Assembly (NCBI GenBank): GCA_965285935.1
Contig: OZ260665.1
Span: 55,490,001-55,554,000 of the forward strand
Source: Ophelia neglecta
Lineage: Eukaryota
Length of the DNA stretch: 64,000 nt
Reading direction: 5' to 3'
Shown: positions 16,295-62,817 of the stretch, in pieces
Position numbering within the stretch: position 1 is the stretch's first letter
Layout: the number at the start of each line of letters is the position of its first letter
The notes under the pieces: model-generated
Seen by the model: only the letters and a program-made list of their open reading frames with translations
The model's database searches: none
Told to the model about the DNA's origin: nothing
Position numbers and translations under genes: made by a program

Positions 16295-17034
16295 TCATGT
16301 TATCGATGAAATGCCACTTAAACTGTCTTCATACATCTCGTCCATGTCAGCTGTGGCCAACTTGGAGCTGATTGTGTTGAATGATCTGAGGGACGCGCTC
16401 ATGCTGGGGCTGCTGGGCAAGGAGGAGCTCGTCCTGCTGAGTACTCTGCAGTCCCCGTCTTTTGCTCGGGCACGCCGTCTTTGCACGCATTTCAATGTCA
16501 ATACAACTATTGCTATCAAGTTTATAGCTGATATACTGATAGCAACTGCCGGACAAAACATTAAGATAGAATTACAAAGGTGTACATTGGGTACTAGATA
16601 ATGATGTGGACAAGTTCTTAAAACTTCTGTCTCTTTCTGCATACCTTATCCTAAATCATGTAAGATTCTATATTTTTACAAATATCAATTATGATATCAG
16701 TAAGTAAGATAAAGTCGAGGCCTTTATAACACAAAGCATGATTTTGCTGTCCCAGAACGGTGATAAACAAAAGAATGTCCAATTGATTTGTTTTCTCACC
16801 ATTGAATCTCCAATTTTAAAATAACAATTATATATTAGGCCTTACGGTTCGATTGTACTTATATATCGCAACAGCTTATATTTGGTTCGACCGGTCATGC
16901 CAAACTAAACAATCAATAAAGTAGTCTCAAGGACCTAAACCTACCGATGACACCATAGGTTATCGTGGATGGAAGGACTTGGTTCTGTGATTGAGAATCA
17001 AGCTTATTCTCTCCTATCTGTGGTTGAAAGGCAC
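16295..17034 (-). CDS. Gene A juxtamembrane region, TM helix and cytoplasmic tail
   Basis: 16945-17034 [30 protein letters not shown] joined to 16295-16545 [29 protein letters not shown] (hydrophobic stretch then basic stop-transfer)...[32 protein letters not shown]. Confidence 0.82.
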
Positions 17035-20000: not shown

Positions 20001-23000
20001 CTATTATAATCAACATGGATAGAAAACCAAAAGATAATTTTTTATTAGGAAGACGTATATTAGGTTTCTGCCAACGACAACATAAGTGAAGCCTTACCTG
20101 TATTTGTTGTTTGGTGTCGTACCAGCTAAGATAAAATACGGACTGAGCAAAGCTAGCGAAGTTGACGAGGCCTACTCTAGTTCCAAGTTGTCCTATCTCA
20201 AGAGACTGGACAATGTCCATCATAAACTGTTTCATGTCTAGAAAAGCCTGAGACCCGGCAAAGTTAACACTACCAGACGTGTCAACCATGAAGACAAGAT
20301 CGACTGCACAGACTGAAAACGAAGTCACCATACACACCAGAATGTCGTAGTTTGAGGTAAGTTAATATATAGTGCATGTGGAAACATATTGTACACGATT
20401 AGACAGCTCTAGTCTATTCGAATCGAATGTTGATTGAAATGCACTTCTTTGACCATTCAGACATGTCAACTTCCGTAAAAGAAACTAGCTGACGCTCTTT
20501 CCACAAAACTGGACGGGCGTGCATGACATTATTTCAAAGTACATGTTTATGATAATAAATGGGGGAAATGAAAACTGTATACTTCACATGAATGCACGCG
20601 AAAAACGTTGTATATCTAATTATTACCATTGTAGTATAAAAGCCTCGACTGCGAAAAGTGATAAAAGAGATAGCTACAGATTAAGGACCTGTGACTAGTG
20701 ATGGCTTACCGTCGGCAGGGATAACATTGATGGTGGTAGTTGAAGTTGTGGGGGCTGGTGTTGGAAATGGAGTGGGAGCTGGGGTAGGGGATGGAGTTGG
20801 AGGAAAGGTAGGAGGTCTTGTTGGAGGGGCAGATTGCGTGTTTCTTAATGTCGTCGTTGTCAGGACTTCAGTACATAGCTGCCCTGTCAACCTGTCTACT
20901 AACAAAGGCAAAGAACTCCCCCTGGATACCAGAAAGAAATCTTCGTTAAAGTCTCCCAGGGTTACATCCTGTAGTTCACTGACCAATGCACCAGCGTTCT
21001 GTGTGACACCGATCGCTTTAAACTCTATCTCATTGTCTGCTGCTTCCAGTGCAGTCAACCGAGTCAACGGTGGATCGTCTGAAATACCATCTGTTATCAA
21101 CAGAGCCACATTGCGGGCTTCTGGACGATCTCCATTGTTGACCTCGCCAAACATCTCGTAAGTAGTAAAGTATATAGCGTCTGCCGTATTCGAACCCCGG
21201 CTGGTCGGTCTTGGTGCCAGCAAAATATCCTGTTGCATGTCTGGTTTATTGTTATGTGTGTTGAGTCTGAATACGCTGTTAGCCTGGTCCGTATATGTGA
21301 CCATACCAACGTTGGCCTGGCCTGGACCCACATTGAGTTGTTCCGTCAGAGAGGCGAGGAAAGCGAGCGTTGCCGGCCAGTCAACAGCCGGGTCCCCATC
21401 CACAACAAACACCAAATCAACTAGACAATCTACAGAGAACAACATCTAGTAAGAAAACCAATATCATCACACAATAAACAACAAAATATGTGATAAACAC
21501 AAAGCAAACGAGTACAGTACTAAACATAATAAGACATGTTTATCGATGATCAAAAACTATTCAAGACAGCATGCCAAGCTATATACAGTAACATCAAAGA
21601 TGGATACAAAACTGTGAAACAAGTCAAGCAAAAATTGAAACAGCCATGCCCATGTGTGCTGAGTACTTATGTCTTACTGGTTTCTACTTGTCGTCTGTAC
21701 CGACGTTTCTGCTCGGTGGTGTACTCCTCCTCAGCTCGCATCACCGCCTCTCGTCTCTTCCGGCCACTGGTACCTAGGAACACCGAAAGGTTGCATTTAC
21801 TATCAACACCAGGACATATTGATATTGTTCATGCTCGGTGGCGCTTTGTTGATATTCTGTTTAGTAATACGAATCTACTCATGTGACCCATAAATATTAT
21901 CTATCATATTTGTCGATTTATCAGGATAAAATGTTGTTTTTTCACCGGGTACCTGGACAGTTGTAGTTGCTGTTTCTGATCTGAAATCCCTCATTACACA
22001 TACAAAAGTAACTATCATATGTATCTCGGCAAATCTGGGCACACGTCGCCTGACTCCGCACACATTCGTTCGTGAACATTGCTTAAAAAAGAAAATAATC
22101 ATATCACTAAATATAGGTCATGGAACATGACAATCTACTCATGAGGAAAAGCCTTGGAACATACATTTTCCTGAAAACTTTATGAAAAATATGTATTTGT
22201 TTACCGCCTTCTGCTGTTCCGGGTGGTCCTGGTGGCCCAACAGGTCCAGGGGATCCTGAAACAGTCAACTATTTGTATCAAATACCACATGACTCGTAAT
22301 TACTTAAGACTGTAATATATTAAATGGACACAGATGTATTTATTAAATTCTAGACAAATTACAAATGATTAACTATTTGTGAAGCAAATGTCATTGCACC
22401 TACCGATACCGGGATCTCCTCGCGGACCTGGCGGACCTGCGCCACCCTGCTGCCCCGGTGGGCCCATTGAACCAATGGGTCCTGGTTCGCCCTGGATCCC
22501 ATTTCGTCCTTTTTAATTGAGAAGAAGAGTACAATATTATCAAAATATTATCAAGCCACTCCGATCATGTCAAACGTATATAAACGAGACAGCACCCTTC
22601 TGAATAGGCGCCCTCTGGCAAACGTGAACATCTATTGCAAGCCTATTTACCTGCTGGCCCCTCAGGGCCAATAAAGCCCCTTGGTCCCTCTGGACCTGTG
22701 CTGCCTGGGATACCTGGCTCTCCGTTACGTCCAGGTGGTCCGGCTTCTCCCGACCTGCCTGGGTCCCCTGAAATAAAACACGTTTGAAGACGTCAGTCCA
22801 AAATTCAAGAAAAAAAGGGAGTTGATAATCGTCAGAAAATGCAAAACAATTGTTCCAAAATCATTATAAACTAACGAACTTGTTAACTAATGAACTTGTT
22901 AAATAAAAAAGGAAACATAGGCCTAGGATCTTAGGAAGAATGGCATACATGCAATTGGAAAGGCCGTTTTCAATACCTACCCGCTTGGCCAGGAAACCCC

Positions 23001-26000
23001 CTCGGTCCAAAAGGCCCAGTACTCCCGGGTGGGCCGGGCTCTCCTGGTCTGCCATTCTCGCCAGGGATACCAGATTGTCCAGGCTCTCCTAACCAAGTAT
23101 ATTAGGCAACTCCATATTATACACACGAATAAAGAATAATGTCAATAGATTCAATATACCAGGATCTTGGCTCTTTTTCTACCCACGAGCATCTTTAAGG
23201 GAAAATGATAGCGGTAGAAGTATAACCTCGACTTCCAGGTTCTCCGTTCCTCCCAGGCAAACCGGGATTTCCTGGTGGGCCTGGTTGTCCGAATGGCCCC
23301 GTGGCCCCAATCCTCCCGTCCCGACCAGGTATTCCGGCCGATCCACTGGCACCAGTAGGACCAAACGGCCCTGTTGCGCCTAGAAAAAGAGACAGTAGAA
23401 CCTCCAGCACTTAACAAAGGCTTTATTCCGTATTTTACATAGCCATATATTTACACAGGTAGGCCAAGTCATTGTCCAGGCACTGATTTTTTTCCGAATC
23501 ATGTATCAAAGTTACCTGATTATGTAAACCTACCAGTAGGTCCCGTCGGTCCGTTGTCCCCAGGACGGCCAATGCGGCCTTCTGGACCCGGAGGGCCAGA
23601 GGCACCAGGCCTGCCAGGTCTTCCTTCCGGGCCAATAGATCCTTAAATCAGAACAAATAGGCCTTCGTTCCGAGAGATGTAACACTTTGCATTGACAGAA
23701 TATCTTGCAAGTATGTCCCAATCCCCGAGGTCGGTCAAGCGTTATTTATTCTTAGAGGGTTGTATTGATCTAATAGACCTACCTGGTTCTCCGGCGAATC
23801 CCCTGGGCCCAAAGGGACCGGTAGACCCTGTAGGTCCTCTGGCACCTGCCACACCCGTGGACCCCGTTGGCCCGTTTCTTCCGGGCGGGCCAATACCACC
23901 AGGAGCACCTGTTATGGTTGTCAAACATAAATCTTATTTACATCAACAGCCTTGTTAAAGTGACGGATACGTTGTTGGCAATAGACGTAGGCAGGTAAGT
24001 TATAGTTTGAGAGCTGCGTATTTAATCCTAGAATGTCACTGAATTACAAACATACATTTATAATCGTTGTAGTGGTCTATCGCGGCACTATACACCTATA
24101 CCAACCCTCTGATCCCCGCGGCCCCGGCTCGCCATCCCTGCCGGGCTCCCCATTCCTGCCGGGGACCCCGGTTTGTCCATCCCTGCCTGGTTGACCTGAA
24201 GGCCCGAGCTCTCCTGGCGGTCCTCGGCTACCTGGTTCTCCATTTCTGCCAGGTTCACCTGGCCGACCAGACTCCCCTGGCTCTCCGGTAAAACCAGGTG
24301 GTCCTTGACCCCCAATACGGCCAGGCTCTCCTGGAGGTCCTGAGCTGCCGGTATCACCACGTCTACCCGGCTCCCCAGATCTCCCCGTGGGACCTGGAGA
24401 ACCTTCACGGCCTTCGGCACCAGTCGGGCCTGGGAACCCTCGAGCTCCCGGCTCACCATTACGGCCTGGCTCTCCTGGCCGTCCCTCAGTGCCTTGAAAT
24501 AAATATCGTCTTGTAACAAATATCTTTCCTGCAGCTTAACATAAACATTCAGAAGTTTATGTTCATTATAGTACTATTTGTCAAAACATTGGAATAATGT
24601 TTGTACATAACTTCGGTACTAGTACACCCCAGCGCCCTCCGCATTCAAGCACTATAAACCTCAGAATGACGCTATTACCTGTAGCCCCGGTTTGACCTCT
24701 GTCTCCATTCGACCCGGTGGCCCCTGTTGGGCCGAGAGGACCAGCTCGACCAGTCGCTCCAGACTGACCACGTTCCCCCATCCTTCCTGTAGGAAGAAAA
24801 CTTACATGTTACGTATCCTAATACAAGATGGAGATAAACATAAAGATTGTTTAAATGTTTAAATACAGCGAGAATCACACCTGGTTCGCCTGGTCGCCCA
24901 GCCTCCCCCTCGGAGCCCGGCTCTCCTGAGCGCCCTGGTTCGCCTGGCGGTCCAAGCGGCCCGAAAGGCCCCGTCGGCCCTCGCTCTCCAGGGGGTCCTG
25001 CTGGACCTTTAATGAGACAATAACGCAAATGTGTACTACGAACACAGTTCTTATTATAAACATATACTCAATTGGTGCCACTCGTCAAATTTATATTACA
25101 CATAAATAATATATAAATCTCTACTGTACGGAGGCTTTCAGAATTAAGTGACATGTATACCAGATGGACCACTTTGACCGGTTGCCCCTGGTTCTCCATT
25201 TCGTCCTGGCTCTCCAGACCGCCCGGTCAATCCCGTGGCCCCCGACCTCCCCGGAGGGCCTATGTCCCCAGCCCTGCCAGCTTCTCCATCACGCCCTGGT
25301 TCTCCCCTTGGCCCTGAAAAGTACGAAGATTAGCAAAACACTAAGTAAAACTGTTGTTCCCCTGAAGTATCTTATCAAAATAAAAGATTTGCCGAGTTTT
25401 CGAAGACTATCACCACCACCAACCTCTTTCACACACAAAAAATATTGTTAGGCATAATCGCATATTCAAATATCCTACCTCAGTACAACTTTAAGACCTA
25501 AAATTTATAGTACACGGCAACATACGTGTTGTTGCAAAAAGCTGATTTTCTTACCCCTACTTTCTCGCAGAAATCGCTAATCCCGCGCGATTATGACACA
25601 ATTCGGTGGCGGTGCCGAGCGGCGGTAAATGTCAAATAGGCTATGTTGCCTAGTAGTTAAATTATCCCCAGGGTCCCCAATTATTGTGATAACATAATTA
25701 CCTATTTCTCCCACGAATCCACGATCACCTTTGATGCCGATGGGACCGATGGGCCCCGGTGGTCCGGATGGCCCTAAAGGCCCGGTAGGTCCTGTAGATC
25801 CAGCCCGGCCCTGTTCTCCCTGAATACCCTGTCTACCAGGCTCTCCATCACGACCTGAATCACCCTGCTCTCCCTTGGGACCAGTGGCCCCTGTTCTCCC
25901 TTCGTTTCCTGGCTCTCCTCGCTCCCCTATCCTCCCTGCATTAAAAAAAATAGTCTTAGATCTTTAAAGTGTTTTCTGTATGTTGAATAACTGGCCTGGT

Positions 26001-29000
26001 TATAACATGCACAGATGTACTGTGTTGGCTTTTCTTATAGGTATTGTTTTCTATTACATCCTAAAACTGTTTCAGTTGCAACGTACTTGCGTAATTATGT
26101 AGTTGCAACCTTAAGACAAGAAATACCAACAAAGTCTACGGTTGGTGGCACAAATCTTGGGGCCCGGGAACAAAAATTATGGACGGCGGAGTCGGTGGGC
26201 TATAACAGTTACTGTACAGGCAATATGGTGAAAATCGGTATAATCATTCATGAATGTAAAATGTATTGCATATTACTGATACTATACCTTTTTCTTATTG
26301 GCTACGTTGCCTGTTATTGAATAGACACAGACATAGATATAAATGCATATCCATTAATAAGATGGTTTAATTCTATTCATAATGCACTAGGCCTATTTGC
26401 TTATTGAAATATAGGCCTATTGGTGTTATTACGAAACGACACATATCCACTTTATGGAGGGCTTTAGTTCTTATTGTTCCACGCCAATCTATATGTGACT
26501 TTATTTGTTATTACATTATTCCAACTCAGGCACATTGGTCAATCTACCTGGCTCTCCGGTATCCCCCTGCCTGCCCGGCGGTCCTTCTGCTCCTCGTACC
26601 CCGGGGGGTCCGATCTCTCCAATGAATCCACGGGGACCCAACTGCCCGGTAGCTCCGGTTCGTCCCGGAAAACCTCGCTCTCCGGGCTGCCCTCGCTGGC
26701 CTTTTAGGAAAGGCAACGAATGATGTTATTACATAGGCTTAATTTAGAAGAAAAATTGCTGTAGGGTTGTTTATTAGTCGTTCAATGATTGTGATTCTAA
26801 TAAAATCGTGATTACCAGTGCCCCCAGTCCGTCCGATAATACCAGGCTCTCCCTGGACGCCCCTAGGCCCCGGCCTGCCTTCGGGGCCTGAGGCTCCTGT
26901 AGGACCGATTGGTCCGATACCGCCCGTTGCACCAGTTTGTCCCCGCTGGCCAGGTTCTCCCGAGAACCCTCGCTCCCCTGGCGGACCCGTGGGTCCGGTA
27001 TTCCCATCTCGACCGGCAACCCCAGGCCTACCTTGAAGTCCTGTGTTGCCTGAAGCGAAAGATCAGTTCTGAATCATTTTATGCCAATTCAACTGCCAAT
27101 AGGAAATTGTTTTTCCAGGCAATTCGGTAACAATATAATACATATACAATATAATTAAGAAGAAAGTGTTAGAAAACAGTAATAATGTATCCAGCAATCA
27201 AATATATTTATACGCCCATAGCCTAATGCATAGCCTCATGAATATAAAATGAAAGTGTATATTGAAATATGCCTCAAAGACCACCTCTCTATTCAGACAA
27301 CCTGTCAATTCGGACTATACTTATATGAAGACCCTGCTGTGCACTTTCAAAGTGAAATAACCTGTCTAAACAGACCACCACCCAAATCAGACAAAAATTG
27401 TACAATCCCTTGAGTGGTCTCAATTCACATGCTTCACGGTACCCAATATATATATTTAAGAGTACAATCCTACCAGTGTCTCCGGGCCTTCCTTGTACAC
27501 CCTGTGGGCCCTCCGCTCCCCTCGGACCTATTGGTCCAATGCTGCCTGTGGCCCCAGGGCGACCATCCTCGCCTGGAAAACCCTCCGCTCCAGGTCTACC
27601 GGGCTCACCGGGTTCTCCTACACGACCCGGTTCTCCAGTGCGTCCTGTCAGCCCAATGGAGCCAGGCAGGCCCACTTCGCCCCGCTCTCCCCTCTCCCCG
27701 ACACGACCTAAACACAATTACCAAATCATATTATGGGTGCTCATCGTGGGGTTTTCCTATAACGTTATAATTTATGTTATTGTACTATACTGTGAAATTC
27801 CAGCGTTGCAAACTAGTATACAGGTATTAACTTACCCGGTGTCCCAGGGTTTCCTGCTGGGCCCGGATCTCCGGGAAAACCCCTCGGTCCCTCCCGTCCT
27901 ATAGTTCCAGTTGCGCCTGCAGGCCCCGTGCTACCTGGAGGACCAGCTGTTCCAGTCGAACCTGTCGGGCCAGGTCTTCCTGCCGTGCCTAGTCTCAAAA
28001 TAACAAGATTATATTACAATAATAGTCTATGCGTATATCTAACTATAATTAAGTATTTCAAATAGCAGCAATAGGCCCGATAATTTTTTTATGGCATTCT
28101 TACTATAGGCAAATAATAGCTCACATTTTTGTGCATCAGTATAAATCGGTTAAACAAATAAGCACTTGGTTAACTGACCTCATTCAAGTTATCGTGATAT
28201 TTTGTTTAAGATAGTTGAAATAGGCCTACTGTTTGCAAGCAAGTGTTGATAACAAAATATAATTTCGACTGCGTTTGGTTTCTTTCGCATAAAGGTAACT
28301 TTGCCCGGAGCAGTTTGCCAGCCTTTTTATTCTCATGACTTAAATGGTAAATAGTTTAAGCTTTTCCAAATAAAAACTAACGGTTCCAAGTATTTTGGCA
28401 TAGTCTATTATTTCAGTAAGAACAAATTCCGTGGAATCGTTGTCAAACCTAAACGCCAATAAATGAACAGCCCAACCTGTGGCTCCTGTCATTCCGTTAC
28501 GACCCGGTTGTCCATTTGCTCCTGGGCTTCCCGTTAATCCCCTTAAGCCGGAGCTTCCAGACTCTCCTTTCTGACCGGGATCGCCTCTCGCGCCGTCACG
28601 GCCGTCTCGACCGGGGGGACCTTCCTCTCCCCGGGGCCCGGTCCAACCAGTTCCTCCTGTCAGACCGGTGATACCTACATCACCCTTGTCACCTGGAAAG
28701 AACATGTCGACCTTCATGTTAAGTATATATAATTCATATATCAATTCGTGCAAGAACCTGTCTTTGTTTGTTATGGCTAACTGTAATATATCTCCAGCTA
28801 TTTTAATCGTAAATTCATCAATCGCCATAAAGTATATGCCCCCCAGTAGTTTACCTTTCTCTCCTGTTCTCCCGATTGGTCCATCTCTACCCGGATCTCC
28901 CCGGGGGCCTACAGGGCCAGTAGGCCCGATCGGTCCCGTAGATCCGCTATCTCCTGGCCGACCGATGACTCCAGTAGCCCCCGGCTGGCCAGTTCTACCC

Positions 29001-32000
29001 GGAGCTCCCTCCAGACCTCGCGGACCCTCTCTACCCTCTAGACCAGTGGCTCCACTGGCTCCAGTTAAACCACCAATACCTGACGATAACAACAACTTAT
29101 GCTTCAATATCAAGGTGCTGTGAATCAGATTAATGTTGAAGATGTAATTGCACACTCTGAGTGTCTCGGAAGGACTACACCGTAAGGCGTCGGTATTGGG
29201 TGGATATCAAACAGGTTAATGTACGAGTTTACTCTACGGTAAAAAAAACTCGTCTGTGGTCATTTTTTATCCATTTTGTAGCCTCGAAATCAGAACATTA
29301 TCGAATACACCTAACTAACGGACAAAGTAAAGAGCCGATTACTGCTGCCAGGCTATTTCATTATGATAGGTCTTATCTTATAATCTACTAGGTATTGGTT
29401 TATTGATTAGCTGTGGTACCTGTAGCGGTATTGGAGTATATACTTTACGTGTATGTTATTTTTACCTGTAGCTCCTGTTCGGCCATCATCGCCTTTCTGT
29501 CCATTGTCGCCCTGTCTACCCGGAGCGCCGGCTGGCCCTGTCCTCCCGATAGGGCCTGAAGCTCCCGTGATACCCCTGGGACCCTCCCGACCTGTGACTC
29601 CTGTACTTCCCGGGGACCCATCTCGACCAGCGTCTCCCAGGCTGCCTTTAGAACCTTTGTCCCCTTTCCTACCGGTCTGACCAGCCTCGCCTGACAATAA
29701 CAGTGTACAATGGAGATGAGACAAAAAGGAAATAACATTTGAATAAGCACATTCCTGCAAATCCGGTGTATCAGTCTGATTGGAAGGGTAGAAGGACAGG
29801 CTATCGCTTAAATTTGGGCACTAAACGCAAATCATGTTAAGGAAAATACAAGTGATTAGAGGGGGTTGTTTCACCTCGTTCGCCCTGCCTCCCGGGGTCA
29901 CCCTGAGGCCCAAACGGCCCAGGCCTACCGTCTCGGCCGGGTATACCCTGTGTACCGGTAGCGCCACTCCGACCTGTTGGCCCTAGGGGACCTAAAACAG
30001 CAAAAGGATATATAAGTCTTCTTTATCAATCAGTAAATATTTCCCTAATAGACTGATATTAGTCCTGTTAACCTCCTGTACCTGCACTTCCTGTAGATCC
30101 AGTGAATCCCCGTGGTCCAGTTGCCCCCGTTGGACCGGTCACTCCCGGGCGACCATCCTCCCCGGAGAAACCCCTTGGACCCTCTCGCCCGCTGGCCCCG
30201 GTTGCTCCTGGCGACCCTTGTCTTCCCTGAATTCCCTGGGAACCTGAGGGACCTATTGGCCCAGTCTGACCGGTTGATCCCATCTGACCGGGTTCACCCT
30301 GCCTTCCATCACGTCCTGGTTCCCCGGAACGACCAGTGGCTCCCGACTGCCCATCAGAACCACTTTGACCAGTTGCTCCAGTTTGTCCCAGAAACCCTCG
30401 TGGACCAGAACTTCCTGTATTGGAAAGCAAATATCACTCGATGGCCTCTTCAGTTAATCTACCCAAATTTAATTAGGGCATGAATATTTGACTGACTGTG
30501 TAAACACTCTTGTATGAAATCCTACCCCTCTCTCCTGGTCTTCCTGGCTGTCCTGTTGCTCCTGGGTTACCCCTGGGGCCTTCTCTGCCTTCAGGACCAG
30601 GGATGCCGGGACGACCTTCGGGTCCTGTGATACCGGTGGCCCCACTAGAACCACGTGGACCAGATGATCCTTAAAACAATGAAATTGTGTAAATATTTAA
30701 TTAAATTAGGATGATTTGTTATTATTGTCTACATACTTTTTATTTTGAAGAATTTCAAACTGGTAAAGTAGGAATGCAGTGCAAAAACCTGAGGCGCCCG
30801 TTGTCCCGCGTGGACCAGCCTCGCCGGTGGCACCCGGGAGACCATTTCTTCCCGATGGTCCTGATACAGAATAATATGAATCAGTTATTGTAAGTGGTAA
30901 ATGGCATATGAGATCCTTTTAAACTAGCAGCGTTTATGTTAGGTATCAAGACTTCCTGGAAAGCTATATAATGAACGTAGGTTATGAATATAAAACTGTT
31001 CATGTCACTAATGCTATGCCTAATCAAGGGTATCTATAGGTAAATCACATACAAGTGAGCGCTTAAAGATTCTGTACACTGAATTATAGCCAAAATATTC
31101 ATTGTTATTGTCCATGTCATTGGTAAAAGACTGAAAGCATTGAGTTCACACACCGGGGTTACCGTCTCTGCCGTCTTGCCCGGGGCGACCGGTGTCTCCC
31201 TGACGTCCGGGTTCTCCAGGCCTCCCGTCCGTCCCGTCTCGTCCGGGCAGACCAGATGTACCAGTAGCCCCTGTTCGGCCAATTGGTCCAGGACGACCTT
31301 CAATGAGACCAAAATCAGGCTGTATGATTAACTGCAAATTCCCGCGTTCAATATTTTCATGGCTTTTATCTCTAAACCTACCCTTCTCACGAAGGTGCAC
31401 ATTCTGTAGGCGTGATAATCTATACAGTGACTTTTCTTTTTTTTGTCTAACATGTCTATTGGGTCTCTTTTAGCAGAGGGAACCGCACCACCATGATTTA
31501 GTATTCTTGGGTCTCTGGATGGATTCAGAAACTTTATTTATTGTGAATAGACTGAGCGGTTAGAGTGTTGTTGGTCTCGCTTACCGTCGGCTCCCGATAA
31601 GCCGACTGGCCCTCTTTCTCCCGGTGAACCCGGCTCGCCACGCTCTCCTCGGAAACCCTGCTCTCCTATGGCACCAGCCGAACCAGAATCACCTATAATA
31701 TAAACACAGTGAAAATCAAAACTAGACCTTTTACCTGGTTTAATGGGGGGCTGCGATTTAAATGCTCTCGAATGTTTATGTTTTAAATGTCCAAAGGCCC
31801 TTAAATAATTCCAAACATCACTTCAAGTTTGGAGTAACTGAGTGGGATAAAATGATTATCCAATTAGGGATTATTGAAATTTGTTCAAAGGCGGCTTGTT
31901 TTCAGAGGTACATCTTAATTTCTATTATACTGTCCAGCTTTATAATACATATATGCCTATATCTAAATATAATCCTATCTGCGAAAAAAGGTCGAATAAC

Positions 32001-35000
32001 CTGCGATAAAAGGTTAAATGGTGATGAACTGGTTTACTATACTCATTTCCTTCTTGACATTTTAACGGATAATGAGGCAATTAATTATAAATGGACATCA
32101 AAGTCCATAATTAAGAACTCCGTTCGCAAACCCTGAAGCCCTATCTAAAATTTCTCTGTAAAGATTGCCTATAGTGTATACCTCTGTCTCCTTTGGGTCC
32201 AGGAGGTCCTGTTTGCCCGGTACTGCCCGTGTAGCCTCGAGGACCCAGGGGGCCTGTCGCTCCACTCTGACCATCTCGACCGTCACGGCCATCTAAACCT
32301 ACAACCATGCAACGCGGGGAGAACAAGTTGAATACTCTGTATTATATCGGATTAATTACAGATTTAACATTTAAAACAATGCACTGACATGTCTCCTCAA
32401 TCCAGCGGGTGCTTTGCACATGAAATAATAATTCATGATTATTATGCTTCAATCTGTTTTTTGGAAACTTATAATATTCATATTCTGTTGAGGCTCGATT
32501 CACCAGGCTTTACCTGGAGGTCCTGAGGAGCCTCTTTGTCCACTTGCGCCCGTGCTGCCGTCTCTGCCAGGTTGTCCGTCTCTCCCCCTTTCTCCGGGAG
32601 ACCCCTGCGGCCCGCTCGGTCCTATAGCACCTGTCGTACCTCGTCGACCGGACTGTCCAGGATCTCCGGTCCTTCCTGGCGGCCCCGGGCTGCCATCACG
32701 CCCGGGCTCTCCTCGAGAACCAGGGGGGCCAGATGGACCTACAAACACCCAAGGAGGATAACTGAATAATAGGTTATATTTAACAACCTAATCTATTCTC
32801 AGACGGAATTAATGGAAATTACTGACCTATTGGTCCTGTGCTGCCATCCCTTCCACTACTACCAGTGGCACCCGAGGGACCCGGCCTTCCCGTCAGTCCT
32901 GTGGCTCCTGTCAACCCCGACCGACCAGTCATACCTGACACAGCAGAAAACTTACATGGATAAGGTTACTCAAAATATAATCATATTTACTCAATGCTTA
33001 AGGGCAGTTCAGGCCCCTGTGTCGAATATTGTCTTGTAGAAAACTGTTGTTGGTGAAGGTACTACGCTTGCCCACCTGTAGCGCCGGTAATACCCGGCCT
33101 GCCGGTGTCCCCTGCGTCTCCCTTTGAACCCGGACCACCCCGCTGTCCCTCGGGCCCCGGGCTGCCATCACGGCCTGGTTCTCCAGCTTCACCTGAAACA
33201 CATTAGGGTAGACTTATGGCCAATTCAGAACCGCTCCAATCGGAGCGCTGGATCTATGGGCCTACAGTCTGAATGTAACGAGCTTGGAAACAAGGTAAAG
33301 TGACATTCCCGAAAAGAAACTTGCCTGCTATCCCCCTTTCGCCGGCAGCGCCTGATCTTCCCGGTAGCCCATCTCTCCCGGCTTGCCCCGTTGGCCCAGG
33401 CCGGCCGTCCCGACCCGCCGGACCCATGCTTCCTGTCTGCCCAGTTCGTCCTGTATAACCGGTGGCCCCAGACGTGCCCGATTGCCCCTTCTGTCCGGTG
33501 GGTCCAGGTCGTCCGTCTGTACCTCGGATCCCAGCCTCTCCCCTGTCACCCTTATCACCGGGTCTGCCTTCAGCTCCTGAAAGTAAAGTTATACAATCAT
33601 AGAAGTGAGTTTGAAATGTGACTATACACATACGTCAGGAATACTATCAGAAAAGTCACACAAGCGCAACAGAAGCCTGCATCATCATGTTCTTTCATTG
33701 GGTAAGGCCTTTAGTTTAGGAATTTATTGTAAATAGAAAGTGTTTTCAAACCGGGACTGCCGACTGCCCCTGTTCGTCCTTGTCTTCCGTCTGGTCCAAG
33801 GGGTCCAGTTGGGCCCGTGGGTCCCGTTGGACCAGTGGGCCCTGTTCTCCCCGGGTCTCCCTGCCGCCCACTAGCACCGGTCGCCCCAGGTGGTCCGGAG
33901 AGGCCGGTAGCCCCGGATTCTCCATTCCTGCCACTGCTCCCTGTCGAGCCCGGCTCTCCGCGCTCTCCAGGCCGACCCTGTGGACCTTCTCTACCCGACG
34001 CACCTAGGGTCAGACATTAACAGAAATTAGGCCTGAACAGTCTTGTTCTACAATAATTCGGAAGAAGGGGCTCTCACATTGTCCATCAGCGACTCGTCCC
34101 CAATTAATTAATAAACCAAGCTAAATATAGATTTTACCTGTAGCCCCGGAGGGTCCCGGGCTGCCCGATGACCCTGTGGCCCCGGTGATTCCAGACCTCC
34201 CCGGAGTGCCCTGAGATCCGGGCTGTCCATCCCGACCCGAAGTGCCTTGAGGACCAGTTGGCCCCACTGGACCCGTCTGCCCGCTGGGACCTTCAGGACC
34301 GCTCGGGCCAACGGGTCCTGAAAATTGACGTTCCTATATATTACCACTTTGGGGACTGGACTTTAAACATTAGTTCTGTCATTTTACAACAATCAATCAA
34401 CAATATTATTAGTTACTCTCATTTAATGTCTAACGGCTAATCAGCTTCATTATGTAGACCAAATTGAAGAGAGACCTGTATGGCCTGTGGCCCCTGTTCT
34501 TCCAGCCCGACCATCGCTCCCCTGGGGTCCTGTGGATCCCGCTTCTCCACGGGGACCCTGTGTGCCTGTCGCTCCGGTCCGCCCTGTAAATAGTATCAAA
34601 TGGTCCAGCACATGCATGTCCTTTGGTTATAAATATCATGAATAAAAGTTTACTACGAGCCGCATAACATAGACTAGTATAGGATTCAACACAGACATAT
34701 TATCTAGACCCACATAAGCATTATTTGCTTCAGGAGTCTTTGTTGGTTTTATTATTTACTTTTGTATACTAATGTTGTTGTTAATAAAATAGTACTACTA
34801 CTACATATATACATATATCCTTACCGGTTTGTCCGGTAGCTCCCGTAATTCCTCCTCCAGTACCTCCCGGCCCAGTCGGCCCCGGCAGGCCGGGCCTACC
34901 CGGAGGTCCTGGCGACCCAGGAGGACCGGGGGGACCTAAAATAACCAAACAAGAATTTACTACCTCGCATAATTAATGTAACAAAAATGTATATCGCAAT

Positions 35001-38000: not shown

Positions 38001-39653
38001 ATCAATTTGATTACCTATCTAAAAGAATGCTATCTACAGAGAAATGAGTAGATTGTAAACCCCTGCCTAGAAGTCATGTGCTTGGAGGAGTCGATGACGT
38101 ATCATGCTAGGTTATTTGGAATCGTGCTTGTATTCCTCGGGTACAGGTAAATGGTTTTTCTACGGTTTCCCATGCACAGTGTATATCTTGTCATGCGACT
38201 TACCCGGCGGCGGAAGTTGGCAGGCGACATCCACTAGATCTGACAATATGGAGTTGAGCGAGGCGAAATCCTTCACCTTGACTGTCTTGTTGTTGGAAGA
38301 CATGAGTCTAAGTTCTTTTTCATTAATGGCATCTGTGATTCCCACACAAACTATATAGATTCCGTATTTTTTGGCTAGTTCCGACTGGATGAGGGTATCG
38401 TCCACCCTCTCATTGGCTATTCCGTCGGTGACAAGAATGATGATGTCCCTCACGTCCGGCCGGTCTCCGCGACTCGCGTTGAACACCAACGTCCGCGCAA
38501 GCTCTAGCGCATGCGCAATATTAGTCCGACCACCAACATACTTTATCTCCTCAATTTTTTCCGAAACTTGGTTTGCATCCTCGGTTTCTTCCAAGTAGAA
38601 CTGGACTGTGGCGACATTACTGTACTTGACAGCGGCAATCTGAACAGTGTCCCTCCCTATGTCCAACACCGGACTAGTGACTATCTCTTGTAAAAACTCT
38701 ATCATCAATTCCCAGTTCGTTCGATTTTTTTCTGTTATGCTACCCGAAGCATCGATAAGAAATGTTAAATCTGCTTTTTGGCAATCTGGCGACGAAAAAC
38801 AAAGGATGATTATCAAAATTATTTCGATTGGCTTTAAAAGACCTTATCATGTTGGTGGTAGTCCCACCAAATACCAACAGCAGGTATCGGATGCCCTAGA
38901 ACTAGATACTTTCAGATCTAGAGACATTATGGCACTTAGCTAAGCTGGATTATTTTAATGTGTCACTATGTACATTTGAAAATCTTTATCGGGTCAGTAC
39001 TAATAGATACGCAAAACCGATTATAAATTACCATTGGCATTGCTAAAAAAAAATCCACACATGTATAAATATTTTGCGAAGCGAAGCAGACTTAAGTTGA
39101 GATTATATTCACTGCAGAACCTAAACCTATAATCTAGATTATTCTATATGACCATGTCAGCCCCCATGCTCCTGACTTTACCTCCTGGGATGAAGTCGAC
39201 TTTGGCATTTTTCGATCCCTGACAGTCTGAAAAATAGCAAAGTTTTCTTTTAAGAACATAATTGACACTCATGCTACATTTTGTATGATTTGTCGTGAAT
39301 AATAAATGATTGTCTTGATCAATGGTCAATTAATGGGCCAATTATAAATCTATTTCATAAAGATTCCTTCGCTACGGAGTGCATGATTAGCAGTACAAAC
39401 TTACCTTAAGATAATTGTGGGTATTTTGGACTAAAACCTTACTATAATAATTATTATCATCATTATTGGTATATTGTTGGAACAATACTCACCCACCGAT
39501 GCAAGCACAGATAGTGTCCACAGCACAAGTAAGCCCTAGAAAATAAATTAGACTGTTATTAAGGTGTAAATCCAAAAATATCCATTGCTAGTTTATAGTT
39601 AACAAATAGTCTTCCAGGCACAGTTTGTCTATCTGTCTTACCGGATGCATCAT
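16295..39653 (-). CDS. Gene A: giant VWA-collagen-VWA-EGF type I transmembrane collagen (~3219 aa, 54 coding exons)
   Basis: Manually spliced exons 5'->3': 39642-39653, 39493-39535, 39182-39226, 38204-38785, 36716-37381, 36298-36419, 35994-36160, 35121-35419, 34 collagen exons from 34825-34935 down to 22205-22255, 21946-21975 (least certain), 21678-21773, 20710-21429, 20098-20312, 19794-19929, 19496-19614, 18884-19028, 18684-18779, 18408-18530, 17323-17412, 16945-17034, 16295-16545. Phases are compatible at the junctions and the total of 9660 nt is divisible by 3, ending in TGA. Confidence 0.88.
17323..18779 (-). CDS. Gene A Cys-rich module, Ca-binding EGF and truncated EGF
   Basis: 18684-18779 [32 protein letters not shown]; 18408-18530 [41 protein letters not shown]; 17323-17412 [30 protein letters not shown]. 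Confidence 0.9.
18884..20312 (-). CDS. Gene A VWA domain 5 (four exons)
   Basis: 20098-20312 [11 protein letters not shown]...RVGLVNFA; 19794-19929 SSTNTAEAL...[15 protein letters not shown]; 19496-19614 DGES...IMAVGIS; 18884-19028 [16 protein letters not shown]...FDMCE. Confidence 0.9.
20710..21429 (-). CDS. Gene A VWA domain 4 (degenerate MIDAS) plus mucin-like Pro/Thr stalk
   Basis: [12 protein letters not shown] (DxSxS lost)...GSNTADAI...[16 protein letters not shown], then [32 protein letters not shown]. Confidence 0.9.
21678..21773 (-). CDS. Gene A linker exon with two furin-type sites ([32 protein letters not shown])
   Basis: ttcctag|GT ACC AGT GGC CGG AAG AGA CGA...ACC A|gtaag; 96 nt, phase 1-1, in frame with the VWA4 exon. 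Not in the ORF track. Confidence 0.8.
22205..34935 (-). CDS. Gene A collagen triple-helical domain (34 exons, 5613 nt, ~1870 aa)
   Basis: Exon lengths 5'->3': 111, 108, 180, 252, 252, 117, 108, 225, 117, 108, 144, 72, 144, 342, 117, 225, 225, 216, 153, 234, 234, 153, 234, 153, 126, 108, 387, 126, 108, 153, 108, 117, 105, 51. All are phase 1-1 (split Gly codon) and the 31 central ones are multiples of 9 nt. Confidence 0.93.
35121..36419 (-). CDS. Gene A VWA domain 3 (three exons)
   Basis: 36298-36419 [40 protein letters not shown]; 35994-36160 [14 protein letters not shown]...[11 protein letters not shown]; 35121-35419 ...[11 protein letters not shown]...ITVGIT...ACPKP. Confidence 0.9.
36716..37381 (-). 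CDS. Gene A VWA domain 2 plus Pro/Thr-rich linker
   Basis: [11 protein letters not shown]...RVGVIVFS...[10 protein letters not shown]...VAIVIMDG, followed by [23 protein letters not shown]. Confidence 0.93.
38204..38785 (-). CDS. Gene A VWA domain 1 (single phase 1-1 exon)
   Basis: [11 protein letters not shown] (MIDAS)...[10 protein letters not shown]...[17 protein letters not shown]...VGIT, flanked by Cys; ag/gt boundaries. Confidence 0.93.
39182..39653 (-). CDS. Gene A exons 1-3: signal peptide and N-terminus [33 protein letters not shown]
   Basis: ATG ATG CAT CCG|gtaaga at 39653-39642; ttttctag|GGC TTA CTT GTG... at 39535-39493 followed by gtgagt; tttcag|AC TGT CAG... at 39226-39182. 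Hydrophobic core, then a plausible cleavage site near VDC/QG. Confidence 0.75.
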
Positions 39654-53800: not shown

Positions 53801-56800
53801 TCAGCTTTGGAGGTAGCGCAAGATGAAGAACCTATCAAAATATAAATCATTTTTTTTAAATTTCATAGTTAACATAATTGTTAAAAAATAGTAATAAACA
53901 AGATATTATAAATATAGGAACGCAAGTCCCAATCACACAAGCACACACAAGCCATAAACCAAGAAAAAGAACAAAACTAGAAAATACACACTATGTAGGT
54001 GACATATAATATAACATAACAAATATGGGATGAAATATTAGGAGAATAATTATACAAATAAAAGTAACAATCAAATATATATAAATCAAAATGATTTAAA
54101 AAATGTGAAACAATAAAAAAAACTACAGAGTGGAAACAATGGTGTGATACAAAGAGACCCCACACATGGACAGTGTCAGGGGAGAAAATAAGATAAAATA
54201 GCCAACGGACCGAGTAACTGTTAGCGTTGCACCTTTTTTTTTTATATTAATACCGTAGTAAGGGAATTAACGACGGATTACTTCAACATGTTTTAAACTT
54301 GTGCAGGAAGAAACACTATTTATAATTGGTGGAATGGAGTTCCAGAGCGGAGGCTCTCTATGTTGGAATGATTTTTTAAATTGTGGTTTAGGGAAGTATT
54401 AATGATCAGACTGTTTTTATTATTGTAGCGTTATATCTTGTCATAAACCCTGGCTTTCTTAGTTGGGTATTTACAATATCAAAGCAACTCCACATTAAGT
54501 GATTTTGGAGAAAAATATATACATACTGTTGTTAAACTAAAAGAAAACTTTAGGTGATTGATGGAGACTATTGTTAGTATCACCTGTGTGCCATGGAGGG
54601 CCAGATATTATGTTTATATTAATATTTATTTTGTTTTGTATCAGGACTTATATCAGGACCTACCTGAGCATGTGAGTTCCTGACCAGCGACTAGGTAGCC
54701 GGATTCGCAGGCGCAGAAGTAACTGTCATAGGTGTCGACACACAACTGAGAACAGCCACCGTTATCGTACAGACACTCGTTAACCGGGCACGAATCTGAA
54801 AACAACAGGTACTTTGTAAATTTTCTACTTTAACTAAATAGTTGTGTTAATAACAGGATATTCTATTTTACTATTGGCATTCCGTAAAATAATGGAATTT
54901 TATTGTCAGTACATGTATATATATAGCAATTAATCTCACCTCCGCCGCCGCCGGTTCCTGACGAACCAGGGGGCCCGGCAGGACCTGTGGCTCCTGTGCG
55001 GCCGGAGGGTCCGGAAGGTCCGCTGTCTCCCCTAGGTCCAGACGGCCCAGACGGTCCCGTGTGACCAGTGGCTCCAGTACGACCGAAACCTATAATACAA
55101 GAGCATGCCAAGCATCAATTCTCTGAGATGATAAGAATTGAAATATAACGGTGATAAGTTTTGGCGACGATTCTGCGGCTGTTATTGTAAAAGTCTGCCA
55201 ATAATGCGATAAATCCAATTTCCTTAGTAAGAAAAGGTTTAACTTAGTAATAAATACCATACAGTTTGAGGGTCTGCTTCAATAAACGGATTCTGTAATG
55301 GATTACCTGCAGGGCCAACAGGTCCCGTGTGTCCGGTGGCTCCAGTCCTGCCATCACGACCACTTTGTCCCGCGGATCCTGTTGCTCCAGTTCGCCCATC
55401 AGGACCGGACGGGCCAGTAAATCCCTGGCGGCCGGTGTGACCAGTAGCCCCAGTACGACCCACACCGGGTTGACCGGTATGTCCTGTCGAGCCATGGTTA
55501 CCCGAAGGCCCGGTGTGTCCTGTGGCGCCAGTGCGTCCTGGACCGCCAGAGCGACCAGTAGCCCCCGTCATACCAGAACTGCCGGCAGGGCCTGTGGCGC
55601 CGCTGCGACCACTGGTTCCTCGAGCACCGGTTGCTCCTGTCAGACCAGTAGGTCCAGTAGACCCACTGGCGCCTGTAGCTCCGGTGCGGCCGTTGGGACC
55701 TGATGGACCGGATGGTCCCTCACGACCGGTTGCTCCTGTAAGTCCAGCAGGCCCAGTGTGCCCGGTGGCGCCAGTACGGCCAGACGGACCAGACGGACCC
55801 GAGGGCCCGGTGAATCCTTGGCGTCCAGTGTTTCCAGTTGAGCCTGTAAATCGCACAAATTGATTAGCCCTACATCAATTGATAAATATATTTGTATAAC
55901 ATGTTTTAAACCGTATTATATATTATGAAATTTGTGACTTACCTGTTCGTCCAGAGGGTCCGCTTGGTCCAGTGGAACCTGTGTCTCCGCGGTTTCCTCT
56001 GGGACCGGTGTTGCCAGTAGCTCCTGTGCGACCCGCTGAGCCAGCAGAACCCGTCGCTCCTGTCCTGCCGTCTCTGCCATTAGGACCAGTAGGCCCGGAC
56101 GGCCCCGTGTTTCCGGTTGCTCCTAAAAGGGAAAGGGGATGATTCAAACGAAAACACGTAGCTTATAGATATAATGTCCAAACCATCACAATTTATTCAA
56201 ATTAGTATAAGTATATAGTATAGAAAAAAGGTGTGTAGATATGTTATCATAGAAAACAAATTTGGTATCCGTCAGAACAAGTAAATAAACGTGCAGCTGT
56301 TGATATATTTATACAACATTGATCAGTTCAAGTTTTATGTATTACCACCCATAAATTATAGTCAGAATTAAAAGTTATACAAAATTAGGCCTACTAGATT
56401 ACAGATGCTTTCAAGTTTGGCAGACTTTGATAATTATCTAATCTATTTAGTCGAGTTCTTAGACTTACATGCGCATTATGAATATATCTATAGATTATTT
56501 AAACAAAGACCTACCCAACAATATGCAGAAATTATTAAAGTCTAGAGACTAAGCAAATATACATTAATTTTACATAACATTAATATTAAAAAACCTTACA
56601 CATGCGCACACACTAAACACACGAGGATTAAGTGTCAAATGTGAAGCGACAAAGACTAAGTTAAATAAACAAATAAAACAACAGTACAAATAAACTCATA
56701 GGGTAAGATTTACAAATACAGACAAAAGAACAGATTATTAATAATGTTTCTACATAACTATCTTATATATCTTTTACTTTGTCCGAGACCTGAAAGATAA

Positions 56801-62800: not shown

Positions 62801-62817
62801 TGCTGCAACGCACCCTT
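49050..62817 (-). CDS. Gene B (5'-partial): paralogous VWA-collagen-EGF-VWA-EGF type I transmembrane collagen with Thr-rich helix
   Basis: Exons: 62230-62817, 61148-61315, 60765-61004, 60442-60648, 60081-60197, 59731-59955, 59412-59546, 58952-59200, 58575-58754, 57799-57978, 57107-57394, 56821-57000, 55943-56122, 55307-55843, 54940-55089, 54664-54795, 53478-53831, 52934-52986, 52389-52556, 51250-51904, 50767-50862, 50466-50535, 49547-49686, 49050-49378. Continuous frame to TAA; start codon not found in the window. Confidence 0.88.
50213..50268. repeat. 14-bp tandem repeat x4
   Basis: ttatatgtggaaga repeated. Confidence 0.8.
50596..50653 (-). other. 21-bp inverted repeat (hairpin) in a gene B intron
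   Basis: cacagtgtagatagtgatgac, 16-nt loop, gtcatcactacctacactgtg. Confidence 0.85.
51250..53831 (-). CDS. Gene B two C-terminal-side VWA domains
   Basis: 53478-53831 + 52934-52986 + 52389-52556 ([11 protein letters not shown]...NTNTSGGL...IAIVITDG...IYSVGVT) and 51250-51904 ([11 protein letters not shown]...GQTNTAAGI...VVILTDG...FSVGIT). Confidence 0.92.
54255..54646 (-). mobile_element. Decayed 3' fragment of an L2/CR1-group LINE ORF2 in a gene B intron
   Basis: Minus strand reads LIQNK...PWH... and [19 protein letters not shown], resembling the LQNKAIR...GPxLWNSLP C-terminus of LINE RT proteins; broken by frameshifts. Confidence 0.45.
54664..54795 (-). CDS. Gene B EGF-like domain directly after the helix
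   Basis: [44 protein letters not shown]; ttttcag and gtagg boundaries. Confidence 0.9.
54940..61315 (-). CDS. Gene B collagen helix (14 exons, 3036 nt, ~1010 aa)
   Basis: Gly-X-Y dominated by [15 protein letters not shown] and GPS; exon lengths 168, 240, 207, 117, 225, 135, 249, 180, 180, 288, 180, 180, 537, 150. Confidence 0.93.
57612..57774. mobile_element. Degenerate pogo/Tigger-like MITE in a gene B intron
   Basis: Repeated gtggtct motifs ending in ggttttcactg|ta, the same terminus type as the element at 10243-10392. Confidence 0.4.
58255..58443. repeat. Degenerate ~31-bp minisatellite in a gene B intron
   Basis: Recurrent gatactgct(t)ttgcc...atcata core, about 6 copies. Confidence 0.7.
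61548..61710. mobile_element. ~165-bp foldback MITE in a gene B intron
   Basis: Imperfect TIRs ggggcttccataggatt / aatccaatggaaacaccc, plus inner inverted pairs gggaggtttag/ctaagcccctccc and ttaggca/tgcctaa. Confidence 0.5.
62230..62817 (-). CDS. Gene B N-terminal-side VWA domain
   Basis: [16 protein letters not shown]...RVGAVVYS...[10 protein letters not shown]...[17 protein letters not shown]...ILAVGIT...ACPTAPPP. Confidence 0.93.

What the first reader, a model, noticed from the sequence alone, without database searches (positions are those of the whole stretch)
21678..21773. Dedicated exon with two furin sites between the helix and the membrane-anchored half of gene A
Seen: a 96-nt exon encodes [32 protein letters not shown], two R-X-[K/R]-R sites just after the last Gly-X-Y exon. 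Established: R-X-K/R-R is the furin consensus, and furin sheds collagens XIII, XXIII and XXV. Inference: the VWA4-VWA5-EGF-TM half acts as a membrane-bound C-propeptide that registers the chains and is then cut off, releasing a VWA3-collagen rod. Gene B has an EGF at this position and no such site that I could find, suggesting a shed (A) versus retained (B) division of labour.
Basis: partly seen in the sequence, partly recalled or inferred. Interest (0 to 1): 0.8.

Follow-up and report, generated by a model that had tools for sequence, protein, structure and literature searches.

The report
Gene-specific furin-site hinge exon in collagen
One of several neighbouring membrane-anchored collagen genes of an invertebrate carries an extra 32-codon exon made of two textbook furin-type cutting sites, placed so that cutting would free the collagen rod from its membrane anchor; the exon looks real but neither its expression nor any cutting could be tested here.

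Summary
The exon is there. On the minus strand, 21773..21678 (96 nt, phase 1-1, AG/GTAAGA borders) reads (G)[31 protein letters not shown].

The exon does not follow the last Gly-X-Y exon directly, because an EGF exon (22081..21953) lies between them. Gene B therefore does not have an EGF "instead". Both genes have the EGF, and gene A alone has the extra hinge exon.

Two further paralogs also join EGF to VWA through only 3-5 residues, and none has a candidate exon there. The hinge peptide is unique in the genome.

By splice-site scores, GC content, codon usage and frame fit, the exon is very probably coding. Its two R-X-[K/R]-R motifs are the only ones in the coding frames of genes A and B. 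The genome encodes proprotein convertases.

No RNA run, ortholog or proteomic evidence was available. Cleavage, shedding, the "membrane-bound C-propeptide" idea and the shed-versus-retained split therefore remain inference.

Best reading (about 0.45): a convertase-cleavable hinge that releases VWA1-3–collagen–EGF from a VWA4–VWA5–EGF–TM stub. That would be a mirror-image variant of the known furin-shed membrane collagens.

The scan's other notes on this locus come from the same window.

The parts
22205..22255 (-). Last Gly-X-Y exon of gene A (…[17 protein letters not shown]), phase 1-1
   Evidence: Sequence and frame read. It closes a helix of 33 detected exons and 603 triplets.
21953..22081 (-).
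   Evidence: Translation. Pfam FXa_inhibition/EGF_CA-type matches. It is 44% identical to gene B's EGF exon. Acceptor and donor scores lie within the range of true sites.
21678..21773 (-). Hinge exon, 96 nt, phase 1-1: (G)[31 protein letters not shown]
   Evidence: Sequence and translation. Intron-only splice scores: acceptor 6.5 (true mean 7.5), donor 5.9 (true mean 4.5); it is the best of 18 frame-compatible candidates in the intron. GC is 0.57 against 0.33-0.35 in the flanks, a value reached by 1% of intronic windows. Codon log-odds are 0.50 bit/codon in frame and about 0 in the other frames. The exon is unique in the genome.
21751..21762 (-). Convertase motif 1: R-K-R-R, predicted cut before E-A-V-M; 7 residues after the last Cys of the EGF
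   Evidence: motif rule from established knowledge (R-X-K/R-R).
21709..21750 (-). Acidic core [14 protein letters not shown] between the two basic blocks; the Tyr is flanked by Glu (possible sulfation site)
   Evidence: The whole hinge is 52% charged and falls on the disordered side of the charge-hydropathy plot.
21691..21708 (-). Convertase motif 2: K-R-R-Y-R-R, predicted cut before Q-V-E-T-N; 5 residues before the first Cys of VWA4
20710..21429 (-). VWA4 exon (720 nt, phase 1-1): a VWA domain with a degenerate MIDAS (DGDPA), closed by an N- and C-terminal Cys pair, then a Pro/Thr-rich stalk
   Evidence: Translation. Pfam VWA match, 1.4e-23. Acceptor tgttgttctctgtAG and donor G|GTAAGC read.
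16295..16642 (-). Last coding stretch of gene A: transmembrane helix ([20 protein letters not shown]) followed by [11 protein letters not shown] and a Ser-rich tail
   Evidence: ORF. It is unique in the genome at E<=1. The basic residues lie on the C-terminal side, so the orientation is inferred to be type I.
53832..54795 (-). Comparator in gene B: EGF exon 54795..54664, then an 832-nt intron and the VWA exon from 53831. The EGF-to-VWA link is 5 residues, with no candidate exon carrying a basic motif

Best explanation
Gene A encodes a type I membrane-anchored collagen. Its order is VWA1-3, a helix of about 600 triplets, EGF, hinge, VWA4, Pro/Thr stalk, VWA5, two EGF, TM and a cytoplasmic tail.

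The 96-nt exon is a real coding exon. It may be constitutive or a cassette, since skipping it keeps the frame. It lengthens the EGF-to-VWA4 link from about 5 to about 34 residues. The added piece is a disordered, highly charged hinge whose only recognisable features are two proprotein-convertase (furin-type) sites flanking an acidic Tyr-containing core.

Inferred mechanism: the chains trimerise while tethered to the ER membrane. A furin-type convertase in the trans-Golgi or at the cell surface then cuts at RKRR|EA and/or RRYRR|QV. No disulfide spans the hinge. The VWA1-3–collagen–EGF trimer is therefore released into the matrix, and VWA4–VWA5–EGF–TM stays behind as a stub.

What is shown and what is inferred:
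- Shown: sequence, frame, splice signals, coding character, uniqueness to gene A, and presence of convertase genes.
- Inferred: expression, cleavage, release, and any chain-registering role of the C-terminal half.
For: Evidence that the exon is coding:
- The acceptor is as good as the median true acceptor, and only 1.4% of decoy AGs match it.
- The donor GTAAGA scores above the true-site mean, and the exon is the best of 18 frame-compatible candidates in the intron.
- GC is 0.57 against 0.33-0.35 in the flanks.
- Codon log-odds are 0.50 bit/codon in frame against about 0 out of frame, and 2.5% of stop-free intronic windows reach that value.
- The stretch is not a repeat.

Evidence that the motifs are specific:
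- They are the only R-X-[K/R]-R in the coding frames of genes A and B.
- This is the only spliceable motif-bearing candidate exon in genes A, B, Z and C1 and three other collagen-EGF loci.
- Shuffling the residues reproduces two motifs in 2.4% of trials.

Evidence on accessibility and enzymes:
- The hinge falls on the disordered side of the charge-hydropathy plot, whereas the EGF and the VWA core fall on the folded side.
- The flanking EGF has six Cys and VWA4 has a terminal Cys pair, so no bridge spans the cut.
- Convertase P-domain loci are present.

Precedent: furin shedding of MACIT collagens and COL-99 (PMC4678570). BLI-4-dependent processing of nematode cuticle collagens, some of them predicted transmembrane (PMC10538796). 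Convertase cleavage in the C-terminal region of collagen VI alpha3 (Heumüller et al. 2019, cited).
Against: No transcript evidence exists. The only runs holding the locus are three DNA runs of one sample.

No ortholog was found, so conservation is untested. Paralogs B, Z and C1 lack the exon. It is therefore probably a young, gene-specific exon, and such exons are often minor cassette forms.

Consensus sites are not always used. Basic clusters could instead bind glycosaminoglycans. The signal peptide of gene A was not located, so topology rests on domain types and the positive-inside rule.
Confidence: 0.45

Rival explanations
1. The exon is real and expressed, but the basic blocks are not cut. 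The hinge serves as a charged spacer or as a heparin/glycosaminoglycan-binding or sulfotyrosine-bearing interaction site, and the collagen stays membrane-anchored.
For: GRKRRE and QKRRYRRQ also fit clusters of basic residues of the heparin-binding type (own knowledge). The acidic EEEY core suggests a modification or interaction site. No cleavage evidence exists.
Against: Both blocks fit the stricter R-X-[K/R]-R form rather than merely being basic. Their arrangement is reproduced in only 2.4% of shuffles. The hinge is predicted to be disordered and lies between closed domains. Convertases are encoded.
Confidence: 0.2
2. The stretch is a pseudo-exon: an open, GC-rich piece of intron that is never or hardly ever spliced in. 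Gene A then joins EGF directly to VWA4, as its paralogs do.
For: Skipping keeps the frame (G|AT = Asp) and gives a junction like that of B, Z and C1. The exon is absent from all paralogs and unique in the genome. There are no RNA data.
Against: Splice scores match those of true sites, and the stretch is the top candidate in the intron. GC and frame-specific codon usage are exon-like, with only 1% and 2.5% of intronic windows reaching those values. No comparable motif-bearing candidate turned up in the other gene regions scanned (gene B and parts of five related loci).
Confidence: 0.17
3. The hinge is cut, but as a maturation step of the Notch S1 or integrin-alpha kind. The two halves stay together non-covalently on the membrane, so cleavage changes conformation or mechanics rather than shedding the collagen.
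For: Furin-cut membrane proteins that remain heterodimers are well known (own knowledge). VWA and EGF domains are interaction modules.
Against: No cysteine is available to bridge the cut. Cutting at both sites would remove a 20-residue piece and leave little to hold the halves together. Nothing here shows that the EGF and VWA4 interact.
Confidence: 0.1

Closest known systems
MACIT membrane collagens (collagens XIII, XXIII, XXV; C. elegans COL-99)
   Same: Membrane-anchored collagens whose collagenous ectodomain is released by furin-type convertases at R-X-X-R/R-X-K/R-R sites next to a non-collagenous linker (PMC4678570).
   Different: MACITs are type II proteins. They have an N-terminal anchor, a juxtamembrane site, short interrupted helices and no VWA or EGF domains. 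Here the anchor is C-terminal (type I). The sites lie C-terminal to a helix of about 600 uninterrupted triplets and several hundred residues from the membrane, and the protein carries five VWA and three EGF modules.
Collagen VI-type chains (N-terminal VWA domains, helix, two C-terminal VWA domains), including convertase/BMP-1 trimming of the alpha3(VI) C-terminus
   Same: The VWA–helix–VWA–VWA order is shared. The best-scoring database matches to VWA4 are named collagen VI-like or collagen XII-like multi-VWA proteins. The C-terminal region of alpha3(VI) is cut by proprotein convertase(s) (Heumüller 2019, cited).
   Different: The collagen VI helix has about 110 triplets (seen in the hits) against 603 here. 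Collagen VI has no EGF after the helix and no TM. Its convertase cut removes distal C-terminal domains, not the VWA domains adjoining the helix.
Nematode cuticle collagens processed by BLI-4
   Same: Many are predicted membrane-anchored and carry a consensus furin site whose cleavage is needed for secretion and matrix assembly (PMC10538796).
   Different: They are small, have interrupted helices, type II or signal-peptide topology and an N-terminal site. They share no domain with gene A outside the helix.
Cassette exons that encode a cleavage site (for example exon 6 of Kit ligand)
   Same: A short, frame-neutral exon whose main content is a proteolytic site deciding between membrane-bound and released forms (own knowledge, not tested here).
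   Different: Alternative use of the gene A exon has not been shown, and the protease class differs.

Membership tests
Proprotein-convertase (furin-type) substrate | R-X-[K/R]-R motif with Arg at P1 and P4 | tested here: met
   RKRR and R-Y-R-R (preceded by K-R). They are the only such motifs in the coding frames of genes A and B.
Proprotein-convertase (furin-type) substrate | Site exposed in the secretory pathway or extracellular space, in an accessible linker | tested here: inconclusive
   The hinge is on the disordered side of the charge-hydropathy plot. It lies between an EGF and a VWA, N-terminal to a TM with basic residues on its C-terminal side. The signal peptide was not located. No structure model was made, because the exons may not be joined.
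Proprotein-convertase (furin-type) substrate | Convertase present in the organism | tested here: met
   Six matches to the P_proprotein domain PF01483 above the cut-off on chromosomes 1, 7 and 8, two further matches covering halves of one more domain on chromosome 7, at least six loci in all.
Proprotein-convertase (furin-type) substrate | Cleavage observed (fragments, neo-N-termini, inhibitor sensitivity) | not testable with these tools
   No RNA or protein data for this organism.
MACIT collagens (XIII/XXIII/XXV/COL-99) | Type II topology with N-terminal cytosolic and TM segment | tested here: not met
   The TM is in the last coding stretch, 16642..16295, downstream of all domains.
MACIT collagens (XIII/XXIII/XXV/COL-99) | Juxtamembrane furin site in NC1 and several interrupted collagenous domains | tested here: not met
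   The sites are separated from the TM by VWA4, the stalk, VWA5 and two EGF. The helix has 603 triplets in 33 exons, and every exon detected reads Gly-X-Y throughout.
Collagen VI-type chains | N-terminal VWA domain(s), helix, two C-terminal VWA domains | tested here: met
   Pfam VWA matches on both sides of the helix.
Collagen VI-type chains | Helix of about 335 residues; secreted, no membrane anchor | tested here: not met
   603 triplets against about 110 in collagen VI-like hits. A TM is present.

The most novel reading that the evidence does not exclude
A type I membrane collagen uses its VWA–EGF–TM C-terminal half as a membrane-tethered C-propeptide. The half gathers and registers three very long chains in the plane of the ER membrane. 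A convertase then removes it at a purpose-built hinge. This would be a third route to collagen assembly and release, beside soluble fibrillar C-propeptides and the N-terminal coiled coils of type II membrane collagens. The hinge exon would have been gained in only one of several tandem paralogs, as an evolutionary switch from retained to shed collagen, possibly for an apical or cuticle-type matrix.
Probability: 0.15. Interest if true: 0.65.

Novelty: new variant of a known kind. Interest (0 to 1): 0.4.

Why it matters
If the hinge is used, it would be the first case I know of in which a collagen is released from a C-terminal (type I) anchor by a convertase site placed directly after the helix. 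The natural paralogs without the hinge would serve as built-in controls.

That would give a simple experimental handle on two questions. One is how very long, propeptide-less collagens are registered and exported. The other is how gain of a single small exon can turn a membrane collagen into a matrix collagen.

If the hinge is not used, the finding is just a charged linker in one member of a lineage-specific gene family.

Tried and rejected
1. RNA evidence. The one run search found only three DNA runs of one sample. Laying them showed 21 variable places in 4 kb, none in the exon; about 0.5 would be expected there, so this has no power.

2. Orthologs.
- The exhaustive HMMER search with the VWA4 exon gave 2448 hits, but the top 150 are multi-VWA and collagen VI-like proteins. 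None combines a long helix, EGF and a C-terminal TM.
- The word-based search in the matching length range gave one weak hit.
- The metagenome contig scan gave none.
- Conservation in orthologs therefore stays untested.

3. Joined model. Full-length searches and a structure model of EGF–hinge–VWA4 were therefore left out.

4. Repeat or transposon origin of the exon: rejected. The intron and exon are single copy, and the peptide has no second match at E<=10.

5. 'Two-exon module insertion' (hinge plus VWA4 gained together): not resolvable. All VWA domains are 27-37% alike.

6. Signal peptide of gene A: not found by a simple scan.

7. Organism. A stop-free COX1 piece found only unnamed hits, the best 96% identical. 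The best local VWA hits are from molluscs. I take this only as 'probably a lophotrochozoan'.

8. Heterotrimer of A with B: unlikely along the whole length, because the helices have 603 and at least 281 triplets.

Full report
WHAT IS IN THE SEQUENCE

The gene lies on the minus strand. The minus-strand sequence reads ...ttcggtgttcctAG | GTACCAGTGGCCGGAAGAGACGAGAG...GTAGAAACCA | GTAAGAcat. The exon is 21773..21678, 96 nt. It starts with the last two bases of a split Gly codon and ends with the first base of an Asn codon, so it is phase 1 on both sides. Its translation is (G)[31 protein letters not shown](N).

RKRR (21762..21751) and R-Y-R-R inside KRRYRR (21708..21691) both fit R-X-[K/R]-R.

CORRECTIONS TO THE ANATOMY

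Upstream, the last Gly-X-Y exon is 22255..22205 (…[17 protein letters not shown]). It is not followed directly by the hinge exon. Another phase-1-1 exon, 22081..21953, lies between them. It has a strong polypyrimidine acceptor and reads [42 protein letters not shown]. It has six Cys, matches EGF-type Pfam families, and is 44% identical to the EGF exon of gene B at 54795..54664.

Downstream, the VWA4 exon is 21429..20710 (acceptor tgttgttctctgtAG, donor G|GTAAGC). It reads [18 protein letters not shown]…GQLCTEV, followed by a Pro/Thr-rich stalk. Pfam scores it as VWA at 1.4e-23.

The order in gene A is therefore:
- three N-terminal VWA domains
- a helix of 33 detected exons and 603 triplets
- EGF
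- hinge
- VWA4 and stalk
- VWA5
- two EGF
- a TM helix followed by [11 protein letters not shown] and a Ser-rich tail

COMPARISON WITH PARALOGS

In gene B the EGF exon ends …TCS, and the next exon begins [21 protein letters not shown] after an 832-nt intron.

I found two more family members through the EGF and VWA exons:
- Gene Z lies 16 kb downstream of the window (L013). It has collagen, EGF, VWA, two EGF and TM.
- A copy on contig C1 (L014) has a helix rich in G-R-T-G-A-T-G, then EGF and two VWA.

In all three paralogs, 3-5 residues separate the last EGF Cys from the first VWA Cys. In gene A the distance is 34 residues, and the whole difference is this exon.

I listed every AG…GT pair in the corresponding introns that keeps phase 1 and an open frame. 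The 96-nt exon is the best of 18 candidates in gene A. No candidate in B, Z or C1 has a basic motif; the candidates there are AT-rich hydrophobic strings.

I ran a wider scan of genes A and B, the held parts of Z and C1, and the stretch downstream of the helix in three other collagen–EGF loci. It looked for spliceable phase-1-1 candidates carrying R-X-[K/R]-R and returned only this exon and a shorter 69-nt version of it.

The peptide has no second match in the 762-Mb genome at E<=10. The intron with the exon is single copy.

IS THE EXON REAL?

No RNA run holds the locus. The three holders are DNA runs of one sample, probably the source of the assembly. I therefore used internal evidence. Splice matrices were trained on 48 collagen exons of genes A and B.
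- The acceptor lies at the 46th percentile of true acceptors, and 1.4% of decoy AGs equal it.
- With intronic positions only, the acceptor scores 6.5 (true mean 7.5) and the donor 5.9 (true mean 4.5).
- GC is 0.57 against 0.35 and 0.33 in the flanking intron pieces, and 1% of 96-nt intronic windows reach that.
- Codon log-odds, trained on the VWA, EGF and tail exons, are 0.50 bit per codon in the proposed frame. They are -0.04 and 0.04 in the other two frames, 0.23 for the held-out VWA4 exon and -0.07 on average for stop-free intronic windows. Of those windows, 2.5% reach the exon's value.

I put the chance that this is a genuine coding exon at about 0.8-0.85.

Two cautions apply. The exon is frame-neutral: skipping it gives G|AT = Asp and a junction like that of the paralogs. 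It is also gene-specific. It may therefore be a cassette exon with partial inclusion.

ARE THE MOTIFS MORE THAN CHANCE?

The motif rate in all six-frame open segments of the window is 0.00085 per residue. Pairs within 32 residues occur at four places, and three of them are wrong frames of known exons.

In the correct frames of genes A and B there is no other R-X-[K/R]-R. Shuffling the 32 residues gives two separate motifs in 2.4% of trials. The basic residues are thus arranged as two blocks around an acidic core, not merely abundant.

WOULD THE SITES BE REACHABLE?

The hinge is 52% charged. It lies far on the disordered side of the charge-hydropathy plot (0.27 against a boundary of 0.46), while the EGF and the VWA4 core fall on the folded side.

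Site 1 is seven residues after the last EGF Cys. Site 2 is five residues before the N-terminal Cys of VWA4, which in this class of VWA pairs with the C-terminal Cys (GQLC). No cysteine is left to bridge the cut.

The genome has at least six loci with the convertase P domain.

MECHANISM

The best-supported reading is a convertase-cleavable hinge. Cutting at either site separates the VWA1-3–helix–EGF part from the VWA4–VWA5–EGF–TM part. Cutting at both also frees a 20-residue acidic peptide with basic C-terminal residues.

Cleavage itself is inferred, as is everything downstream of it.

Nothing here tests it.

The 'shed A, retained B' idea rests only on the absence of the motif in B. B could be released by other proteases.

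Helices of 603 and at least 281 triplets make an A/B heterotrimer along the full length unlikely.

COMPARISON WITH KNOWN SYSTEMS

Nematode cuticle collagens, many predicted to be type II transmembrane, need BLI-4 and their consensus furin sites for secretion (PMC10538796).

[quoted passage not shown] 2019, as cited).

Gene A shares the principle but fails the defining features of MACITs: topology, site position and interrupted helices. It also fails those of collagen VI: helix length and absence of an anchor. Details are in the membership table. I therefore file it as a new variant of a known kind, not as a member of either family.

No protein with this architecture appeared among the 150 best of 2448 hits. 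The closest local matches are multi-VWA proteins named collagen VI-like or XII-like, several of them from molluscs.

Annelid cuticle collagens are described as having globular domains, very long helices and, in Riftia, glycosylated Thr in the helix (PMC11766948). The Thr-rich helices of gene B and the C1 copy recall this. I could not identify the organism, so it stays a lead.

VERDICT

The feature is real at sequence level, specific and plausibly functional. It lacks any evidence of expression, conservation or cleavage. Interest is moderate.

Noticed in passing
window 21388-21402 (-), start of the VWA4 exon: VWA4 of gene A has DGDPA where the metal-binding MIDAS motif D-x-S-x-S should be. The corresponding post-helix VWA domains of gene B (LDSSGS), gene Z (VDASGS) and the C1 copy (IDSSGS) keep it. 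So the domain next to the hinge is the one that has lost the usual ligand-binding signature.
   Followed up: partly
window 21709-21750 (-): The core between the two basic blocks reads AEEEYTTEQ, a Tyr with three Glu before it. This fits the usual context of tyrosine sulfation. Double cleavage would free this piece as a small acidic peptide.
   Followed up: no
window 20711-20850 (-): The VWA4 exon ends in a Pro/Thr-rich run ([33 protein letters not shown]). This is probably an O-glycosylated mucin-like stalk between VWA4 and VWA5.
   Followed up: no
window 21704-21705 (-): A GT inside the hinge exon would give a 69-nt, frame-keeping short form (…EEEYTTEQK) with only the first basic site. Its donor score is 3.3, against 5.9 for the main donor.
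   Followed up: partly
L013 (G000:C8:55470001-55480000), minus strand: A third tandem family member lies 16 kb downstream of the window. It has Gly-X-Y exons, an EGF 50% identical to gene A's, one split VWA, two EGF, and a TM with a Ser-rich tail. It has no hinge exon.
   Followed up: partly
L014 (G000:C1:106916001-106926000), minus strand; L018 (C8:62033000-62042999); L019 (C5:25274000-25283999): These are further collagen genes with G-R-T-G-A-T-G-type helices (Thr/Ser in the Y position), each followed by a homologous EGF. The C1 copy continues with two VWA domains like gene B. The pattern recalls annelid cuticle collagens rich in glycosylated Thr (PMC11766948).
   Followed up: partly
window 22410-34935 (-) and 54863-61352 (-): I counted 603 Gly-X-Y triplets in 33 phase-1-1 exons for gene A, all exon lengths being multiples of 9. 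With the same strict rule I counted at least 281 triplets in 15 exons for gene B.
   Followed up: yes
window 21373-21374: One of the three DNA runs carries CC>AG here. On the coding strand this is a silent Pro change plus Ala-to-Ser in VWA4 (DWPA to DWPS), so the sequenced individual is heterozygous in coding sequence of gene A.
   Followed up: partly
window 38160-38816 (-), 51239-51904 (-), 53428-53850 (-), 62096-62842 (-): Several VWA domains of genes A and B carry an R-G-D triplet in the same loop (SRGDRPD, SRGDRVE, NRGDRTG, RRGDRPN). VWA4 of gene A has NGDRPE instead.
   Followed up: no
window 39182-39227 (-): A short open stretch with good splice signals lies upstream of VWA1. It reads [14 protein letters not shown], like the first strand of a VWA domain cut short, and may be a remnant or a small exon. 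The signal-peptide exon of gene A was not found.
   Followed up: no
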